Virus record (IMG/VR): IMGVR_UViG_3300027541_000009
Coordinates: 1 to 64,000 of that record
DNA length: 64,000 nucleotides
Reading direction: 5' to 3' (one strand)
Numbering within the stretch: the stretch's first letter is position 1; each line of letters begins with the position of its first letter. Under the pieces are notes generated by a model, which had not been told where the DNA came from, searched no databases, and worked only from the letters and a program-made list of their open reading frames with translations. The position numbers and the translations under genes were made by a program. Shown in pieces: positions 2,662-52,800 of the stretch.

Positions 2662-3486
2662 ATGATGACTTCACAAAGTCCAAGAATTTACATATACAAA
2701 ATTACCTTTGAGGAAGTTTTGTATTACTATTACGGTGTTCATAAAGAAAAAACATATAATGAGTATTATATGGGTTCTCCTATAACAAACAAATGGTGTT
2801 GGGAACTTTATACTCCAAAGAAACAAATATTGGAATTATTTGAGTTTAGTGATGAAGGTTGGATAAAAGCACAAGAAGTTGAAAAAAGATTAATACGACC
2901 TTTTTTTAATACTGATAAATGGTGTTTGAATGAGGGTTGTGGAGGACAAGTTTCTCTTTCTATTAGAAGAAAAACTGGTAAAAATATCGCAGAAAGAAAT
3001 AAAGAAAAAAATATTGGTATATTTGTTATGACGCAAGAAGAACTATCTAAAGCAGGTAGAAAAGGTGGTAAAATGGGAGCAAGAACACAAATGCAAAATA
3101 AAACTGGAGTGTTTGGTAGAACCAAAGAACAAATGACGGAAGATGGTAAAAAGGGAGCACAAAAAGTAAAAGAACTTGGTATAGGAATATTCTCACTAAC
3201 AAGTGAAGAATTATCTGCCTCTGCTAAAAAAGCATATGCGAATGGACTTGCTAAATTACCAAAAGAAGTAAGAAGTGAATATGGTAGAATGGGAGCAAGA
3301 ACACAGATGAAAAATGGAACTGGTATTTTTTCTTTAACACCAGAACAAAAAAGTGAATTAGCAAAAAGAAATAACGCACAAAGATGGATGTGCCTTGAAA
3401 CTGGTTATGTTTCTAACTCTGGTGGTTTATCAAAATACCAGAAAGCAAAAGGTATTGATACTTCTAAAAGAAAACGAATAGCATAA
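2662..3486 (+). CDS. GIY-YIG (Seg-like) free-standing homing endonuclease
   Basis: N-terminal RIYIYKIT...YYYYGVH...YMGS, downstream E and CLN; basic repeated C-terminal modules. Confidence 0.7.
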   Translation: MMTSQSPRIYIYKITFEEVLYYYYGVHKEKTYNEYYMGSPITNKWCWELYTPKKQILELFEFSDEGWIKAQEVEKRLIRPFFNTDKWCLNEGCGGQVSLSIRRKTGKNIAERNKEKNIGIFVMTQEELSKAGRKGGKMGARTQMQNKTGVFGRTKEQMTEDGKKGAQKVKELGIGIFSLTSEELSASAKKAYANGLAKLPKEVRSEYGRMGARTQMKNGTGIFSLTPEQKSELAKRNNAQRWMCLETGYVSNSGGLSKYQKAKGIDTSKRKRIA

Positions 3487-3544
3487 GGACACTTTACGAA
3501 CTGGAACACGGGCACTTGAAAACGGATGCCCTTTGTCGTATAAT
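3487..3544 (+). promoter_or_regulatory. early promoter with upstream palindromic box
   Basis: GGACAC-N8-CTGGAAC; TTGAAA-N17-TATAAT. Confidence 0.85.
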
Positions 3545-11618: not shown

Positions 11619-11680
11619 TAACTAACTTTCTAGGAAACTAGATTTTTTAAATACTACACTTCATAGTGTAGTATTATTAT

Positions 11681-11753
11681 GGGCAAGTAGCATAATGGAT
11701 AATGCATCAACCTTCTAAGTTGCCGATTGTAGGTTCGAGTCCTACCTTGCCTG
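11681..11753 (+). tRNA. tRNA-Arg(UCU)
   Basis: GGGCAAG/CTTGCCT acceptor stem, CT-TCT-AA loop, GTAGG-TTCGAGT-CCTAC T arm; no encoded CCA. Confidence 0.92.
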
Positions 11754-11780
11754 TTAGATTCTAATTAGAATCTAAATTAT

Positions 11781-11868
11781 GCGAGTGAGACTTGGTAGTC
11801 AGAGAGGTCTTATAAACCTTTTCCGCCAGATTAGCGGCTTTGAGATGGTTCGAATCCATCCACTCGTA
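11781..11868 (+). tRNA. tRNA with UAU anticodon (Ile) and long variable arm
   Basis: GCGAGTG/CACTCGT acceptor stem, AGGT-CTTATAA-ACCT, CCGC/GCGG variable stem, GATGG-TTCGAAT-CCATC. Confidence 0.8.
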
Positions 11869-11890
11869 TTACTCTAAACTACACTTAGAG

Positions 11891-11898
11891 TATAAATA
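11891..11898 (+). promoter_or_regulatory. T4-type late promoter
   Basis: TATAAATA upstream of HNH gene. Confidence 0.75.
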
Positions 11899-11922
11899 AA
11901 TGTGTAGAGTGATCTAACTCCT

Positions 11923-12339
11923 ATGATAGGAAAATGTAAAAACTGCGAAAAAAACTTTAAGTATTCTCCATCACAAGGAAAAGGAATTTATTGTTCAAAT
12001 AAATGCCAACAAAAAGATTACTACAAACAAAATATTACCGATTGGTTATCCAAAAAAATAACTGGAAAGGTTAGAGATGGAAGACCAAGTGATTTTGTTA
12101 GAAGGTATATGCTTGAAGAAGCAGGATACAAATGTTCTGAATGTGGTTGGGGAAAAGCAAATCCAACAAATGGTATTATCTATCTTGAAATAGACCACAT
12201 AGATGGTTCAAGAAAAAATGGGTATAGGGAAAATCTTAGAGTATTATGTCCCAATTGCCATACCTTAACTAATACCTACAAAACACTAAACAAAAATATA
12301 GGGTATCACAAATCAAGAAAACAACAATTAAATGATTAA
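11923..12339 (+). CDS. HNH homing endonuclease inside the tRNA cluster
   Basis: CSECGW...LEIDHIDG...N..ENLRVLCPNCH; N-terminal CxxC...YCSxxC. Confidence 0.88.
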   Translation: MIGKCKNCEKNFKYSPSQGKGIYCSNKCQQKDYYKQNITDWLSKKITGKVRDGRPSDFVRRYMLEEAGYKCSECGWGKANPTNGIIYLEIDHIDGSRKNGYRENLRVLCPNCHTLTNTYKTLNKNIGYHKSRKQQLND

Positions 12340-12342
12340 CTT

Positions 12343-12415
12343 GCTGGTTTAGCTATCTGGTGAAAGCACCCGACTCATAATCGGTATCAGGTGGGTTCGA
12401 TCCCCTCAACCAGCA
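12343..12415 (+). tRNA. tRNA with CAU anticodon (elongator Met or Ile2)
   Basis: GCTGGTT/AACCAGC acceptor stem, CT-CAT-AA loop, TTCGA T loop; identity not resolvable by eye. Confidence 0.88.
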
Positions 12416-12432
12416 CTTAATTTTTACTTACA

Positions 12433-19016: not shown

Positions 19017-19280
19017 ATGACCAACTCAAATCTCTCTAAAATCAAACCCAAACTTCGCACTCAAGGTGTTGTATCAGGGAACTTCGGACGTGCTAAAGTT
19101 AAAGCAGGTTCTCCAATGCGTGATCTTGGTGTCACAAATGCCAAGGTAGTTAAAGTCAACACTCAAGAGGAGTATTTGCATCGTCTATATCGTGCTTATG
19201 CAGCAGCAGATGATGTAAAATTGAAGAAGTTTATTTTTGATGAGATCAAAAAGATTCTGATTCAAAGGGGAGAATGGTAA
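19017..19280 (+). CDS. basic hypothetical protein
   Basis: ORF after promoter. Confidence 0.75.
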   Translation: MTNSNLSKIKPKLRTQGVVSGNFGRAKVKAGSPMRDLGVTNAKVVKVNTQEEYLHRLYRAYAAADDVKLKKFIFDEIKKILIQRGEW

Positions 19281-19832: not shown

Positions 19833-19891
19833 TGTGCCACTTGTAGAACTGGCACAGTAAAATCCCATACCCTCAGTTTCTGTGCTATGAT
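19833..19891 (+). promoter_or_regulatory. early promoter
   Basis: TGTGCCAC-N8-CTGGCACA, 41.5 bp before TATGAT. Confidence 0.85.
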
Positions 19892-29048: not shown

Positions 29049-29148
29049 TTATTACTTGTTTAAAAATGTATTAAAAAATATATTGTTGTGTTTATATTAG
29101 TCTGATAAGATGTTGTATAAATACTCTGTTTTATTTGCCTCTGTACTG

Positions 29149-29202
29149 CCTTATAGACTCTATCTATTCCCTTATAGACTCTATCTATTCCCTTATAGAC
29201 TC
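29149..29202. repeat. 21-bp tandem repeat (about 2.6 copies)
   Basis: CCTTATAGACTCTATCTATTC at 29149 and 29170, partial at 29191. Confidence 0.95.
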
Positions 29203-29254
29203 TTATGAGTACCTCAATTAAATGGTGATATTTATAGTCATCTAAGGCTGCATA

Positions 29255-29283
29255 AGTATAGCACACCTCTAAAAATCTGTCAA
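29255..29283 (-). promoter_or_regulatory. minus-strand sigma70 promoter
   Basis: Reverse complement reads TTGACA-N17-TATACT with TGC extension. Confidence 0.8.
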
Positions 29284-29316
29284 CCCCCCACAAAAACTCT
29301 AAGAACCCAGCAAAAG

Positions 29317-29434
29317 TTTTCCACAGGTTTCGGAGTAAACTCAGTGTTTGCAATGCTTTATAAGAATTGCCCTGTGGAAAACTTTATAAAATCTGTGGAA
29401 AAACCTGTGGAAAACTATGTCAACCTGTGGAAAA
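29317..29434. repeat. cluster of five TTTTCCACA (cyanobacterial DnaA-box consensus) 9-mers
   Basis: TTTTCCACA at 29317; TGTGGAAAA at 29373, 29394, 29406, 29426. Confidence 0.85.
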
Positions 29435-29467
29435 CTATTAGAATCTCAGCATGAGTCTCTGATGTGG

Positions 29468-29525
29468 TGTGCCACTTGTGAAACTGGCACAGTAAATGAG
29501 CACAGACCCCGATCTGTGGTATTAT
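29468..29525 (+). promoter_or_regulatory. early promoter
   Basis: TGTGCCAC-N8-CTGGCACA; TGG-TATTAT. Confidence 0.8.
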
Positions 29526-29577
29526 TAAAGGGTGGAGGGAGTGCCCACCACAAGTTCACAACACTAACTCAAACAAA

Positions 29578-29721
29578 ATGCAAGTTCAACTCTCCCGTGA
29601 TCTGATGCTTGGTATGCTTCGCAAGGGGCAGATTGGTTCTCAGATTCTTGCAATTCTTGATGTAATTACTTCCATGGACCCTGAGACTTCTGAGGATGAG
29701 GAAGTGCCTGCTGCTGCCTGA
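29578..29721 (+). CDS. small protein, MLGMLRKG family (47 aa)
   Basis: Translated by hand: MQVQLSRDLMLGMLRKGQIGSQILAILDVI... Confidence 0.75.
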   Translation: MQVQLSRDLMLGMLRKGQIGSQILAILDVITSMDPETSEDEEVPAAA

Positions 29722-29786
29722 TAAGATCGTTCATCACTTCGATATAATGCAACATCGTTCACTATATCTGTGGTGAAATCATTATC

Positions 29787-30217
29787 TTCGTGGTACAATG
29801 CATCATGAACAGTTCGTCTATGAAGTTCGTTATTAAACAACCTCTGAGACAATGAACTTCGTGGTAATTCTCATACGTGGGGGACTTCGTTATTCTGAAC
29901 TCCCAGAGAGTTACTGAGTTTCATACATTTGCCGCAGTATAATACAAACTGTTCGTCCATTAAGTTTTCTTAATGTATGGACAGTTTTTTATACTATTGA
30001 CAGCACATAGAAGTTCGTGGTATAATCTTAGGGCAATCAGTTCGTTATATGAATTGTAGTTGCTTCGTGATTGTGTTTTTATGATGAAGTTCGTCAGTAT
30101 TTCATACGTGGGGGACTTCGTTATAAAAATCACACAGTATTGTTAATATCTTATACGTGGGGGTGTTGGGTATAAAAATCACTCTTCGTTGTTATACACG
30201 AATAACGAAGTCTTCGT
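29787..30217 (+). repeat. TTCGT array with 23-bp direct repeats
   Basis: 13 TTCGT on + strand; TCATACGTGGGGGACTTCGTTAT at 29871 and 30102. Confidence 0.85.
29997..30026 (+). promoter_or_regulatory. sigma70 promoter in ORF-free region
   Basis: TTGACA-N18-TATAAT with TGG extension. Confidence 0.7.
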
Positions 30218-30540
30218 TGATTCTTATTAAACAGCACTGTTTAATTCTTATTGGCAGTTATTTCTGATTGTTGTTGATTGTTATTATAAACCGATGCCCC
30301 CGATATATAAAAACAAGGGTCCCTTATAAGCTATAAACGTTCACCAACGGGCATTCAATTGTCACTCACTTAAAAAAATTCCGAGGGATAAAAAGAAGTT
30401 TCAAAACCTCGTGCCCTAAAAAAATTTTCCGAGAAAATTTGAGAATTCTGTAAGATTTTTGCAAGGGGGGCACCTCTCAGAAAAGTCGAAGAATCAGAAT
30501 TACTATATAATCTTTGAAAAGATGTAAAGAAGAATAAAAC

Positions 30541-30693
30541 ATGGAATTAAATTTCGATGAATACGAGAGAGACTTGCTGATTGATACAATTCAGTATAGA
30601 TTAGAATCTGACGAGGAGTTAATTTTAAGTGAGAGTTTGAAGGATGAATTACAGGACCTTCTCAGAAAAGTAGAAGACGATGAATACTTATAA
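30541..30693 (+). CDS. small acidic protein (50 aa)
   Basis: Translated by hand: MELNFDEYERDLLIDTIQYRL... Confidence 0.6.
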   Translation: MELNFDEYERDLLIDTIQYRLESDEELILSESLKDELQDLLRKVEDDEYL

Positions 30694-30844
30694 TGTATCA
30701 GTAAATGGTAAAGAAGTACTTACACAAATACATTCAGAGGAACTTGAAGGATCTCTTAAAATATTGAGAGGATTGGTATGGGCATCTGGTGGATCTGATA
30801 AGGATATTGAAGTATTTCTAAATAACACAGACACGACGACTTGA
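30680..30844 (+). CDS. hypothetical protein (54 aa)
   Basis: Translated by hand; overlaps upstream ORF. Confidence 0.55.
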   Translation: MNTYNVSVNGKEVLTQIHSEELEGSLKILRGLVWASGGSDKDIEVFLNNTDTTT

Positions 30845-32519: not shown

Positions 32520-32879
32520 TTGGGAGATTTATGTAAATTGGAAAAATTCTCAATGGGTAATCACCTCTTACTAGAGGTTTATAACGTAGAATATACATTA
32601 CTTAACACTTTAGAACCGTTACTAGAAGTCATGCAGAATGCCGTCTGCCGTGCTGGTATGACCATTCTGAATACTTCTAGTCATGTGTTTCAACCACAAG
32701 GTCTAACGGTCGTTCTAACCCTCTCTGAGAGTCATTGCTCTTTACATTCATGGCCAGAACAGGGTTGTGCTGCAATAGATGTTTATACTTGCGGTGAAGG
32801 AAATCCAAAAATAGTTGCAATTGAACTTTTAAAATATTTTAACTCAGAAAACTATAATCTTCGTGAGTTAGATAGATAA
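32520..32879 (+). CDS. speD: S-adenosylmethionine decarboxylase proenzyme
   Basis: GNHLLLE..., LSESHCSLHSWPEQGCAAIDVYTCG; true start probably 32538 (TTG) or 32553 (ATG). Confidence 0.92.
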   Translation: MGDLCKLEKFSMGNHLLLEVYNVEYTLLNTLEPLLEVMQNAVCRAGMTILNTSSHVFQPQGLTVVLTLSESHCSLHSWPEQGCAAIDVYTCGEGNPKIVAIELLKYFNSENYNLRELDR

Positions 32880-49838: not shown

Positions 49839-52800
49839 ATGCCTCAAAATACAAACCTAAATGTTTCTCCATATTTTGATGATTTTGATCCATTAAAGAA
49901 TTATCAAAGAGTACTATTTAAACCTGGATATCCAATCCAGTCAAGAGAATTAACTACATTACAATCAATATTACAGAATCAAATTGAAAAGTTTGGGCAA
50001 CATTTCTTCAAAGAAGGATCTGTAGTAATTCCCGGACAAGTTGCTTATGACTCTGAATATACTTCAGTACAAATAAATGATACACATTTAGGAATTCCAG
50101 TTTCATCCTATATTGATAAATTAGTAGGTAAAAAAATAAAAGGTGAAACTAGTGGAGTTGTTGCAAAAGTAGAAAATTATATTACAGGTGTAGAATCAGA
50201 ACGTTCAAATTATACTTTATATGTAAAATACTTAAGTTCAAGTGATACAGATTTTACTACCACTACATTTTTAGATGGAGAAAATTTAATAACTCTTGAG
50301 ACAATCGATTATAGTTTAACGTCTATTGTTGCAAACACTACATTTGCAACTACAATTATTAGTGAATCCACCTCTACAGGATCTGCAATTAAAATTGTTG
50401 AGGGGATTTATTTTATTCGTGGATTCTTTATTACAGTACCTTCCCAAACTGTAATATTAGATCAATATTCAAATTCACCATCTTATAGAATAGGTTTACT
50501 GATCAATGAAGAATTTTCAGTAGCTTCAAATAATAATGATGATTTATTTGATAATGCTCAAGGATTTTCTAACTTTGCTGCTCCTGGTGCAGATAGATTA
50601 AAGATAACTACAACTTTAATCAAAAAAGAGTTAGAAGATTTTAATGATGAAGATTTTGTAGAGTTAGTAAGAATTGAAAATGGTGAAATTAAAAAATTTG
50701 TAAACACTACTAATTATAATTTAATTAGAGATGAATTAGCAAAAAGAACTTATGATGAGTCTGGTGATTATTATATTAAACCTTTTGTAGCATCAATAAA
50801 AGAATCTCTAAATGATAGAGTTGGAAACAATGGAATTTATCTAGAAGGTTTAAAAACAAAGCAAGGTAATACAGCATCTGATGATTTGGCTTGCATCTCT
50901 ATAAGTCCAGGTAAGGCTTATGTAAGAGGATATGGGATTGAAACAGTAAGTAATGAATTAATAGATTTACAAAAACCAAGAACTACTAATAAAGTTATTA
51001 ATTCGGCACTTCCATTTAATATCGGTAGACAAATTACAATTAATAATGTATATGGTTCAGTACCAGTAGGATTTTCAACATTATCTACTGTATATTTGTA
51101 TTCAGATAGGACCACCACTCCTGGAGTTTCATCTGGTGAAATGATAGGAGTTGCTAACGTATATGATTTGAAATCAAAATCATCTGAGTATGCAAATCAA
51201 ACTACAGAATATGAAATATCTTTATATGATGTCCAGACATATACGTTATTAACTTTAAATGCAAACATACAAACTTTAGCAGAATCTACATTTGTCGAAG
51301 GAACAAGTAGTGGAGCAACTGGATATTTAGTATCTACTATTTCAAATTCAAATATTTTAACTTTATATCAAGTATCTGGATCTTTCTTACCCAATGAATC
51401 ATTAAAATTCAATGGAGTGGATGATGGTAGAATTGTTGTAAGTATAAAAGATTATAATTTATCAGATGTACACCAATTTGTAGGAAATAGTGGAGTTTCT
51501 GGAGTTGGAACTTTTACTGCAGATCCAGTCCTATCTAATAGAATTGTTTTAGGAGAACTTGCCGCACAGTTTACAATTACTGGTGCTTCTGGTGGAACAA
51601 GTAATGTTTCAACATCAAGTACAATATTTTATTCTACAGTAAATGTTGGAGATATTATAACATATACAAAACAAGGACAGACTGTTCCAACATACAATAA
51701 AGTTTCTAGTGTAAATGATTATTCTTACTTAACAATAATTCCAACAACTTCAGTTTCTGGAGTATCCAGTGGAGGATTACCAACATCTACAATAGTCGTA
51801 AATGATTTAAGAAAAGCTACATTAGAAATTCAAAAAACATCTAATGCTTATCTTTATTCTAAATTAGAAAATTCTAATGTTTCAAATGTAGATCTAACTG
51901 GATCTAGTATTATATTTAAAAAGTCTTATGATCTAAGCTCTGGTGATATCTCATCTGGATCTGTAAGTAAAACTTTAGAGACAGATTTAGATTTAACTTT
52001 AGAGCCCTTTGACGAAGAGGATTATACTTTAACTTATAAAAATACTGGTAAGGTTGAACCTTTAAATGATCAAAAAGTTTCAATTTCAGGTAGAACTATT
52101 TCTATTTCAGGTCTTACTGGATCAGGACCTGCTACTTTAACTGCGACTTTCAAAAAAATAAATACAAAAAATAAAAAGAAAGTATATAATCGTTCAACAT
52201 CTTTAATTGTATCCAGATCTAATTCAACATCTTCAGGAATTGGGAAATCAACTTTAGATGATGGTTTAGTATACAGTTCAATTTATGGTGTAAGAGTACA
52301 GGATAAAACTATTTCATTAAATATTCCAGATGTTGTAAGTATTACAGGAATATTTGAATCTTCAGATACATCTGATCCAAAACTTCCAGTTCTTACACTT
52401 ACTTCTTTAAATTCTGCATTAACTAATGCAGTGAAAGGTGAAAGAATCATTGGTAAAACTAGCAATGCTGTTGCTACGTATGTAAATAGATTAGATGCCA
52501 ATCAATTAGAATTAGTATATCTCAACGAGAATACATTTAGATCTGGTGAAGTTGTAGTATTTGAGGAATCTAAAATTTCGGGTGAAGTTTTAGATATTAC
52601 TGTCGGTGATAAGAATATTAAATCATCATACACTTTAGATTCTGGATATAGAAGTGAGTATCTAGATTTTTCTAGAATTATTAGAAAAGAAGATAGTGCA
52701 TCTCCAACCAAAAAAATTAGAATTATATTTAACAACTATACATTAAATGCTGAAGATAATGGTGATTTTGTAACTGTAAATTCTTATGATAAAGAAAGAT

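What the first reader, a model, noticed from the sequence alone, without database searches (positions are those of the whole stretch)
29787..30217. Strand-biased array of TTCGT words and 23-bp direct repeats in an ORF-free region
Seen: 13 TTCGT on the + strand in ~430 bp versus 2 on the minus strand; those two form a hairpin at 30184-30210. A rough composition estimate gives fewer than one per strand by chance. TCATACGTGGGGGACTTCGTTAT recurs exactly (29871, 30102), with a partial third copy at 30153, and a TTGACA-N18-TATAAT promoter (29997) sits inside the array. Inference: a multivalent protein-binding platform (origin, packaging or nucleoid anchoring) or a repetitive ncRNA that sponges an RNA-binding protein.
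Basis: partly seen in the sequence, partly recalled or inferred. Interest (0 to 1): 0.6.

Follow-up and report, generated by a model that had tools for sequence, protein, structure and literature searches.

The report
Cyanophage iteron array beside DnaA boxes
The TTCGT cluster is real and is conserved, always on the same strand, in related uncultured T4-like cyanophages; there it sits against a cluster of host-type DnaA boxes in a gene-free control region, so it is most likely a protein-binding repeat array of a replication-origin-like region, not chance and not a structured RNA.

Summary
There are 13 TTCGT on + and 2 on - in 29787-30217, against 0.35 expected per strand (Poisson 1e-16). This is the only such cluster in the 284-kb phage genome. 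The window is a T4-like cyanomyovirus.

The array consists of two diverged tandem 231-bp modules. Each has its own sigma70-type promoter and terminal hairpin.

About 40 diverged IMG/VR relatives carry 10-17 TTCGT on the gene strand and 0-3 on the other, in the syntenic ORF-free region. That region is only 45-51% identical to the window. The consensus there is TTCGTTATAC. A tight sub-array with 13/17-bp spacing is interleaved with 7-8 perfect cyanobacterial DnaA boxes (TTTTCCACA). It lies between divergent promoters and has no RNA fold.

The window has five such boxes at 29317-29434, split from the array by a 340-bp insertion. DnaA-box clusters near the baseplate genes occur in at least 119 viral contigs and in S-PM2 and Syn9, and they sit next to different, lineage-specific oriented repeats.

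Best reading: iteron-like DNA sites for an unidentified protein, in an origin-like or early-control region that also recruits host DnaA. No binder, transcript or replication data could be obtained.

The parts
29050..29100 (.). AT-rich block (88% AT over 29050-29099) at the left edge of the ORF-free region. Its core, AAATGTATTAAAAAA, recurs next to the DnaA boxes of S-PM2 and in the relatives. It is a candidate unwinding element, or the end of the leftward transcript.
29149..29203 (.). 2.6 perfect tandem copies of a 21-bp unit (CCTTATAGACTCTATCTATTC).
29255..29283 (-). Near-consensus sigma70-type promoter (TTGACA-17-TATACT with TG) reading leftward, away from the DnaA boxes. A 12/12 counterpart sits at the same relative place in relative L017. 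The predicted leftward RNA shows no significant fold.
29317..29434 (.). Five perfect cyanobacterial DnaA boxes: TTTTCCACA at 29317, and TGTGGAAAA at 29373, 29394, 29406 and 29426. The 284-kb genome has only one other cluster (4 boxes at 239066-239129) and 4 single boxes.
   Evidence: consensus from PMC4674748
29452..29721 (+). Window-specific insertion between the DnaA boxes and the TTCGT array. It holds a repeated intergenic element (29452-29520, with paralogues near 19833, 23797 and 26389) and a 47-aa ORF (29578-29721). In relatives the boxes directly abut the TTCGT array.
29766..29996 (+). Unit 1 of the array. It has an extended -10 promoter-like TGgTACAAT (29791-29799, read by eye) and 6 TTCGT (29787-29952). 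The exact 23-mer is at 29871-29893. A long hairpin at 29946-29987 is followed by TTTTTT, as in an intrinsic terminator.
   Evidence: (I4)
29997..30227 (+). Unit 2 of the array. It has the promoter TTGACA-18-TATAAT (29997-30026) and 7 TTCGT on + (30014-30213). The exact 23-mer is at 30102-30124, with a partial copy at about 30151-30173. The hairpin at 30184-30210 is an inverted pair of the motif (TTCGTT / AACGAA). The module is homologous to the promoter-proximal right half of the relatives' region.
30227..30320 (.). The block best conserved between the window and its relatives. It holds the palindrome TTAAACAGCACTGTTTAA, a T-rich stretch with 12-mer repeats (30217, 30241, 30274), and TTATTATAAACCG..CCCCC..TATATAAAAAC.
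   Evidence: (D6)
30541..30844 (+). Two small overlapping ORFs (50 aa at 30541-30693; 54 aa at 30680-30844) immediately downstream. They are found in 39-40 of 40 TTCGT-array loci but in only 1-2 of 96 loci that have DnaA boxes without the array. No known domain.

Best explanation
The TTCGT words (ASTTCGT in the window; TTCGTTATAC in relatives) are direct-repeat DNA recognition sites, iteron-like, for a still unidentified sequence-specific protein. They belong to a conserved 1.1-1.5 kb ORF-free control region. That region lies between the block of small early genes and the baseplate genes in a clade of uncultured T4-like cyanophages. It also holds a cluster of host-type DnaA boxes, an AT-rich block and divergent sigma70-type promoters. 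The most likely function is a replication-origin-like element: host DnaA and the TTCGT-binding factor assemble side by side, with flanking transcription assisting opening or priming. In this window the ancestral layout is rearranged. A 340-bp insertion separates the boxes from the array, and the promoter-bearing module is tandemly duplicated, which doubles the count. Shown: enrichment, strand lock, conservation, juxtaposition with DnaA boxes, position between divergent promoters, and absence of RNA fold in the tight array. Inferred: protein binding, DnaA recruitment and a replication role.
For: (1) Enrichment is far beyond chance and unique in the genome.
(2) Conservation holds without sequence alignment. 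Ten loci found through the neighbouring 50-aa ORF carry 12-15 TTCGT on + and 0 on - (L022: 6/0) in the 1.0-1.1 kb directly upstream of the ORF, although that region is only 45-51% identical to the window. Of 34 loci found through the DnaA-box/TTCGT junction, 31 have 10-17 on + against 0-2 on -, while their flanks sit at background.
(3) TTCGT 5-mers of a reference are kept in relatives below 90% identity about twice as often as other 5-mers (0.55-0.74 against 0.30-0.36).
(4) In L017 the DnaA boxes (3114-3324) and the tight TTCGT array (3285-3410) lie after a + strand terminator (2931-2967). They sit between a 12/12 leftward promoter (2876..2848) and an 11/12 rightward promoter (3513-3541). The tight array folds no better than shuffles on either strand (z -0.9 and -0.6).
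(5) Boxes and motif form a composite unit, CTGTGGAAAAC-TA-TTCGTTATAC.
(6) TTTTCCACA is the published cyanobacterial DnaA box. The phage encodes no DnaA DNA-binding domain.
(7) The architecture recurs with other words. At least 119 viral contigs have the convergent DnaA-box triple, and 57-60 of them have gp6/gp25 homologues in the same locus. Only 4 have TTCGT arrays. Others have different one-stranded repeats, such as TGAATAC x11, TGAAAAT x9 and TCTCGAC x8, and S-PM2 has AAATCTCA-type repeats. This is the pattern expected for lineage-specific initiator/iteron pairs.
(8) The window's inverted motif pair at 30184-30210 resembles the inverted half-iterons that Rep dimers use for autoregulation (analogy from established plasmid biology).
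Against: No binding protein was identified. There is no Rep_3, lambda-O or DnaA-domain homologue in the genome. Flanking small ORFs have no domains, and the Cys-rich basic 100-aa ORF gave nothing. Spacing (13/17 bp in relatives; 13-68 bp in the window) is not the 11/22-bp helical phasing typical of plasmid iterons. In the window itself most sites lie downstream of plausible promoters, and both units fold well as RNA (z -5.4), so an RNA role there is not excluded. GC skew is monotonic and uninformative. Two small cyanobacterial genomes of unknown identity showed no clustered perfect boxes, so recognition by the actual host's DnaA rests on literature from other cyanobacteria. T4-type phages are known to start replication from R-loops and recombination, not from DnaA.
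Confidence: 0.5

Rival explanations
1. A transcriptional control region only. TTCGT sites are operators for a phage or host regulator, and DnaA acts as a transcription factor. Together they tune the divergent and tandem early promoters, with no role in replication.
For: The sites flank the -10 elements of both window promoters: TTCGT sits just upstream of TGgTAYAAT and again 13-14 nt downstream. In relatives a TTCGT sits right after the -10 of the rightward promoter (TATACT-A-TTCGT). The boxes and tight array occupy a divergent-promoter spacer. DnaA is an established transcription factor, which is general knowledge.
Against: An operator array of 8 or more sites spread over 130 bp, well away from either promoter, is unusual. 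The combination of a DnaA-box cluster, one-stranded direct repeats and an AT-rich block is the classic origin layout. The lineage-specific repeat turnover next to conserved boxes matches initiator/iteron co-variation.
Confidence: 0.2
2. An RNA-level motif. The window makes two sRNAs of about 190 nt, or a long leader of the 50-aa-ORF operon. Their repeated UUCGU words bind or titrate an RNA-binding protein, for example the phage RegA-type translational repressor.
For: There are a promoter plus hairpin/T-run for unit 1 and a consensus promoter plus hairpin for unit 2. Both units fold far better than shuffles, at -57.1 and -59.0 kcal/mol with z -5.4. The strict strand bias suits an RNA. In relatives about 5 sites lie in the transcribed leader. 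From memory, untested: the T4 RegA SELEX consensus shares GUUAU with TTCGTTATAC.
Against: The densest array in relatives lies upstream of the rightward promoter and downstream of a terminator, and it has no fold signal on either strand. The two window units fold differently. There is no Rfam match. TTCGT is at background frequency in the rest of the genome, including translation start regions. The low folding energies are largely explained by the terminator hairpins and the inverted motif pair.
Confidence: 0.15
3. Preferred primase start sites on the lagging-strand template. TTCGT followed by T equals a T4-type primase site (5'-GTT) plus the template of a pentamer primer, pppACGAA. The sites would be placed on the strand displaced by rightward R-loop transcription at an origin.
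For: This is inference from established T4 primase specificity (GTT/GCT, pppAC-NNN primers). The conserved word is exactly five templated bases, and the next base is T in 63% of 133 sites. All sites lie on the strand that rightward transcription would displace.
Against: 37% of sites lack the required 3' T. GTT is common everywhere, so an array would add little. No precedent for such arrays is known. Conservation extends beyond the word (TATAC), which a primase template does not explain.
Confidence: 0.05
4. A packaging (pac) recognition region or a centromere-like partition site.
For: Arrays of short oriented repeats are typical of pac sites and of ParR/ParG-type centromeres (general knowledge).
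Against: The array is not near a terminase gene. T4-type phages package by headful without a strong pac site. There are no partition genes nearby. The association with DnaA boxes is unexplained by either role.
Confidence: 0.03

Closest known systems
Iteron-type origins with DnaA boxes (P1 oriR, F oriS, pSC101, RK2 oriV; lambda ori iterons)
   Same: Both have many short direct repeats in one orientation next to a cluster of host DnaA boxes and an AT-rich block. Repeat number and spacing vary between relatives. The repeat sequence is lineage-specific beside conserved DnaA boxes. An inverted copy of the motif lies near a promoter (window 30184-30210).
   Different: No adjacent or recognisable Rep/O-type initiator gene was found. 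The repeat core is short (7-11 bp, against 17-22 bp). Spacing is 13/17 bp or irregular, not about 11/22 bp. The host element is a lytic T4-like myovirus. No functional test exists.
Phage T4 origins (oriF/oriG R-loop origins; oriE with iterons and RepEB)
   Same: The virus type is the same. Strong promoters sit next to an easily unwound stretch. From memory, oriE is described as carrying short iterons and lying in a region of early transcription.
   Different: T4 origins are not known to use DnaA boxes. There is no repEA/repEB-like gene and no sequence similarity. Cyanophages lack MotA-type middle promoters. None of this could be tested here beyond the promoter scans.
DnaA-box clusters outside oriC (E. 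coli datA, DARS; DnaA boxes downstream of lambda pR)
   Same: A dense cluster of consensus boxes could titrate or sense host DnaA, or activate transcription and replication.
   Different: Here the cluster is carried by a lytic phage, it is paired with a second repeat family, and a second cluster lies elsewhere in the genome (239 kb).
Protein-sponge sRNAs with repeated motifs (CsrB/RsmZ type)
   Same: Both have many copies of a short word on one strand within promoter-to-terminator units of about 190 nt (window only).
   Different: The word is not presented in conserved hairpin loops. The densest copies in relatives are not in a transcription unit. No cognate RNA-binding protein is known.

Membership tests
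Iteron-type replication origin | Multiple direct repeats of one recognition word, all in the same orientation | tested here: met
   13 on + against 2 on - in the window. 12-17 on + against 0-3 on - in about 40 relatives.
Iteron-type replication origin | DnaA boxes adjacent to the iterons | tested here: met
   The two are interleaved in relatives. In the window there are five boxes 350-470 bp upstream, separated from the array by an insertion.
Iteron-type replication origin | AT-rich unwinding element next to the repeats | tested here: inconclusive
   There is an 88% AT block at 29050-29099 with a conserved core, on the far side of the boxes. The stretch right of the array is only 66-71% AT.
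Iteron-type replication origin | Cognate initiator (Rep/O-type) encoded by the replicon, usually adjacent | tested here: not met
   No Rep_3, Phage_rep_O or DnaA domain IV match in the 284-kb genome. Neighbouring ORFs have no domain hits. An unrecognised small protein remains possible.
Iteron-type replication origin | Helically phased spacing (about 11 or 22 bp) | tested here: not met
   Spacings are 13/17/19/24 bp in relatives and 13-68 bp in the window.
Iteron-type replication origin | Supports initiation of replication | not testable with these tools
DnaA-box cluster (oriC/datA-like) | Several 9-mers matching the host-clade consensus within about 100-250 bp, far above background | tested here: met
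   Five perfect TTTTCCACA in 118 bp, against 4 single boxes in the rest of the genome outside the two clusters. The consensus comes from the literature.
DnaA-box cluster (oriC/datA-like) | Bound by the host's DnaA | not testable with these tools
   The host is unknown. Two small cyanobacterial genomes showed no clustered perfect boxes.
Structured sRNA / protein-sponge RNA | Own promoter and terminator | tested here: inconclusive
   Predicted for both window units. The tight array of relatives lies outside any predicted unit. No expression data exist.
Structured sRNA / protein-sponge RNA | Conserved secondary structure presenting the motif | tested here: not met
   Units 1 and 2 fold differently. 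The tight array does not fold. No Rfam family matches. Covariation could not be assessed because the homologues are either too close or unalignable.
T4 R-loop origin (oriF/oriG type) | Promoter followed by a downstream unwinding element; the transcript primes the leading strand | tested here: inconclusive
   A leftward consensus promoter at 29283..29255 runs into the AT-rich block about 150-200 nt downstream. Its predicted RNA is unstructured. Priming is not testable.

The most novel reading that the evidence does not exclude
A large group of T4-like cyanophages start (or gate) genome replication at a plasmid-like origin upstream of the baseplate genes. That origin combines host DnaA boxes with lineage-specific iterons bound by a small, unrecognised phage initiator. 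The TTCGT array would be one such iteron set. Phage replication would then be tied directly to the state of the host's DnaA.
Probability: 0.3. Interest if true: 0.8.

Novelty: new variant of a known kind. Interest (0 to 1): 0.62.

Why it matters
Replication origins of marine T4-like cyanophages have not been mapped. The only statement found is a predicted single theta origin in Syn9 (PMC2984593). No paper in the searchable library links cyanophages with DnaA boxes.

A conserved DnaA-box cluster with adjacent lineage-specific oriented repeats gives a concrete candidate locus that can be cloned. It also predicts dependence on a host initiator in a phage family whose model member, T4, does not use DnaA.

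It also gives a defined bait, the TTCGT array, for finding a new sequence-specific DNA-binding protein among the many orphan early genes.

Tried and rejected
- Similarity to cultured phages: BLAST of the region against 50,697 phage records found nothing. The relatives' region matched only 58 bp in S-SCSM2R.
- P-SSM2: its syntenic gap shares only the right-edge block and has no oriented array.
- Rfam at E<=1: no relevant family.
- Exact 22-mer scan of viral contigs: it returned only 100%-identical copies of the same phage, so no diversity.
I did not try to reach reads another way, so there are no expression or coverage data.
- Composite DnaA-box+TTCGT in 401 cyanobacterial genomes: 39 single hits, and the reversed control hit at a similar or higher rate. 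It is therefore not a host feature.
- Text search for the 9-mer: only primer sequences and irrelevant papers.
- GC and AT skew: monotonic because nearly all genes are on +, so no origin signal.
- Candidate binder: Pfam, PHROGs and the Atlas gave nothing on the 50-, 54-, 47-, 84- and 100-aa ORFs.
- Co-occurrence of the 50/54-aa ORFs with the array: real, but confounded by shared ancestry, so I make no binding claim and ran no complex prediction.
- Leftward putative RNAs: no fold signal.
- Syn9 paper (Weigele 2007): not held in the library.
- Syn9 whole-genome skew: I fetched only the first 50 kb and did not fetch the rest or compute a skew, because nearly all genes there are on one strand, as in the window's genome, where skew was uninformative.

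Full report
**Context.** The window is the first 64 kb of a 284,050-bp IMG/VR virus record. Its large ORFs match T4-type baseplate wedge, hub and tail-sheath-stabiliser families. The 248-aa protein just downstream of the finding is 80-86% identical to proteins of Synechococcus and Prochlorococcus myoviruses such as P-SSM2, S-SSM7 and S-SCSM2R. The element is therefore a T4-like cyanomyovirus (Kyanoviridae-type). Nearly all genes are on the + strand. The finding lies in an ORF-poor stretch of about 1.5 kb (29050-30540), between a block of small early-type ORFs and the baseplate module.

**Observation.**
- There are 13 TTCGT on + and 2 on - in 29787-30217.
- The two - copies form one arm of the hairpin at 30184-30210.
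- The exact 23-mer is at 29871 and 30102, with a partial third copy.
- TTGACA-18-TATAAT is at 29997.
- The genome-wide rate is 0.33 per 431 bp per strand, and no other 450-bp window holds more than 4.
- TTCGT is the top 5-mer of the region, with Poisson 1.3e-16.

A structural point was missed. The array is two tandem, diverged 231-bp modules (73% column identity) with TTCGT sites in register. Each module begins with a promoter-like element. Unit 1 has TGgTACAAT at 29791-29799 (read by eye), and unit 2 has the consensus promoter at 29997. Each ends in a hairpin: 29946-29987 followed by TTTTTT, and 30184-30210. The independent enrichment is thus about 6-7 sites per unit.

**Relatives.** The exact 23-mer found only identical copies of the same phage. 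The 50-aa ORF at 30541 gave ten diverged IMG/VR loci at 52-70% amino-acid identity.
- In the 1.0-1.1 kb directly upstream of the ORF in these loci there are 12-15 TTCGT on the gene strand and none on the other (6/0 in the most distant). The non-coding DNA there is only 45-51% identical to the window.
- The extended consensus is TTCGTTATAC(A).
- Part of each array is tight, with 13/17/19/24-bp spacing. At its left edge it is interleaved with 7-8 perfect copies of TTTTCCACA, giving a composite unit CTGTGGAAAAC-TA-TTCGTTATAC.
- TTTTCCACA is the published cyanobacterial DnaA box (PMC4674748).
- Searching that junction found 36 viral contigs. 34 were analysed, and 31 of them have 10-17 TTCGT on one strand against 0-2 on the other, with background levels in their flanks. 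Of the three exceptions, two are cut by contig ends and one (L035) simply has no array.
- TTCGT words of a reference are retained in relatives below 90% identity about twice as often as other 5-mers.
- In the 171-kb contig that carries L017, the only cluster of such triplets is at this locus; one isolated triplet lies elsewhere.
- Five cultured cyanomyoviruses have none.

**The window's own DnaA boxes.** Five perfect boxes lie at 29317-29434. A 340-bp insertion separates them from the array. The insertion contains a 47-aa ORF and a repeated intergenic element that also occurs near 19833, 23797 and 26389. The genome has one more cluster of four boxes, at 239066-239129 next to a GIY-YIG endonuclease gene, and only four single boxes elsewhere.

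**DNA or RNA?** In relative L017 the order along the + strand is as follows:
1. a 12/12 leftward promoter (2876..2848);
2. a + strand terminator (2931-2967);
3. the DnaA boxes (3114-3324);
4. the tight TTCGT array (3285-3410);
5. an 11/12 rightward promoter (3513-3541).

The boxes and tight array therefore sit in a spacer between divergent promoters. That array folds no better than shuffles on either strand (z -0.9 and -0.6). This argues for recognition as double-stranded DNA.

About five further TTCGT lie downstream of the rightward promoter, in the leader of the 50-aa-ORF operon. The window's unit 2 is homologous to this part (30117 aligns with L017 3631, and 30213 with 3776), and unit 1 is its duplicate. 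In the window most copies are therefore probably transcribed. Both units fold well (z -5.4), largely because of the terminal hairpins. An additional RNA role cannot be excluded, but no Rfam family matches and the two units do not share a fold.

**Generality.** 57-60 of these have gp6/gp25 homologues in the same fetched locus.
- S-PM2 has three boxes at 19231-19264, followed by the same AT-rich core as window 29060-29085.
- Syn9 has a pair at 52565/52589, 1.7 kb upstream of its baseplate wedge gene.
- P-SSM2, S-SSM7 and S-SCSM2R have no cluster.
- Only 4 of the 119 contigs carry TTCGT arrays. Others carry different one-stranded repeats next to the boxes: TGAATAC x11, TGAAAAT x9, TCTCGAC x8 and CGCCAAG x7. 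S-PM2 has AAATCTCA-type repeats.

Conserved host-factor boxes beside lineage-specific oriented repeats is the pattern seen where a replicon-specific initiator co-varies with its iterons.

**What it is not.** The composite box+TTCGT is not a feature of 401 sampled cyanobacterial genomes; matches were no more frequent than for the reversed control. The phage encodes no DnaA DNA-binding domain, no Rep_3 and no lambda-O homologue, so the boxes would have to use host DnaA, and the TTCGT binder is unknown. The 50- and 54-aa ORFs co-occur almost perfectly with the array (39-40 of 40 loci, against 1-2 of 96). This is confounded by common descent, and neither protein looks DNA-binding.

**Mechanism, with steps marked.**
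- Shown: an orientation-locked, selectively retained word array coupled to DnaA-box clusters in a conserved non-coding region with divergent promoters.
- Inferred: a sequence-specific protein binds TTCGT(TATAC) head-to-tail, and host DnaA binds the neighbouring boxes. Together they open or mark the region for replication start, with flanking transcription assisting. The leftward promoter runs into the AT-rich block, and the rightward promoters run through the dispersed sites.
- The inverted motif pair at 30184-30210 may be an autoregulatory site, by analogy with Rep dimers.
- I give this 0.5. A purely transcriptional operator role gets 0.2, an RNA-level role 0.15, primase start sites 0.05 and pac or centromere 0.03.

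**Limits.** There are no transcript, coverage or binding data. Skew is uninformative. The spacing is not helically phased. No initiator was found. Whether the actual host's DnaA recognises these boxes is taken from the literature on other cyanobacteria, and two small cyanobacterial genomes of unknown identity showed no clustered perfect boxes. Statements about T4 oriE iterons, primase specificity and the RegA SELEX consensus come from memory and are leads, not tests.

Noticed in passing
window 29317-29434: Five perfect cyanobacterial DnaA boxes (one TTTTCCACA, four TGTGGAAAA) in 118 bp, upstream of the reported array.
   Followed up: yes
G000:C1:239066-239129 (L023 1567-1630): A second cluster of four DnaA boxes in the same genome, with the same convergent layout. 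It lies between a - strand GIY-YIG homing-endonuclease gene and + strand small ORFs, and has no TTCGT array beside it.
   Followed up: partly
L191-L309 (IMG/VR), S-PM2 19231-19264, Syn9 52565-52597: Convergent DnaA-box triples or pairs are widespread in T4-like cyanophage contigs (at least 119), often within a few kb of gp25/gp6. They are flanked by different lineage-specific one-stranded repeats, for example TGAATAC x11 in L226 and TCTCGACGAGA x8 in L291.
   Followed up: partly
window 29452-29520; also about 19833, 23797, 26389: A repeated intergenic element with a conserved hairpin (GTGCCAC..GTGGCAC) followed by AGTAAATGAGCACAG. There are four copies ahead of small ORFs, possibly a terminator/promoter cassette of early genes.
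   Followed up: partly
window 29149-29203: 2.6 perfect tandem copies of a 21-bp unit (CCTTATAGACTCTATCTATTC), downstream of the leftward promoter. Function unknown.
   Followed up: no
window 29255-29283 (-); L017 2848-2876 (-): A conserved near-consensus sigma70 promoter pointing leftward, although virtually all genes are on +. The predicted transcript of about 190 nt is AT-rich and unstructured and ends near the AT-rich block.
   Followed up: partly
S-PM2 RefSeq record NC_006820, 19177-19333: The record annotates tRNA-Asn and tRNA-Leu across the stretch that holds the three DnaA boxes and the AT-rich block. The sequence there does not look like tRNA, so the feature coordinates in this copy may be shifted.
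   Followed up: no
window 32520-32879: A 119-aa ORF containing SESHCSLHSWPE. From memory this looks like the self-cleavage motif of S-adenosylmethionine decarboxylase (speD-type auxiliary gene). It was not searched against families.
   Followed up: no
window 35522-57320: Three giant structural ORFs (2590, 1614 and 2493 aa) matching baseplate-wedge and virion-protein PHROGs. GC content drops to 27-31% across them, against 35-39% upstream.
   Followed up: no
L063-L142 (genome contigs): (TTCGTTA)n or (TTCGTTR)n heptamer microsatellites of up to about 57 copies are common in Bacteroidota (Saprospiraceae, Kordia, Flavobacterium) and in some filamentous cyanobacteria, often just beside gene ends. 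They are unrelated to the phage array.
   Followed up: no
window 11680-12416: Three phage tRNA genes: Arg-TCT, Ile-TAT (90 nt long) and Met-CAT.
   Followed up: no
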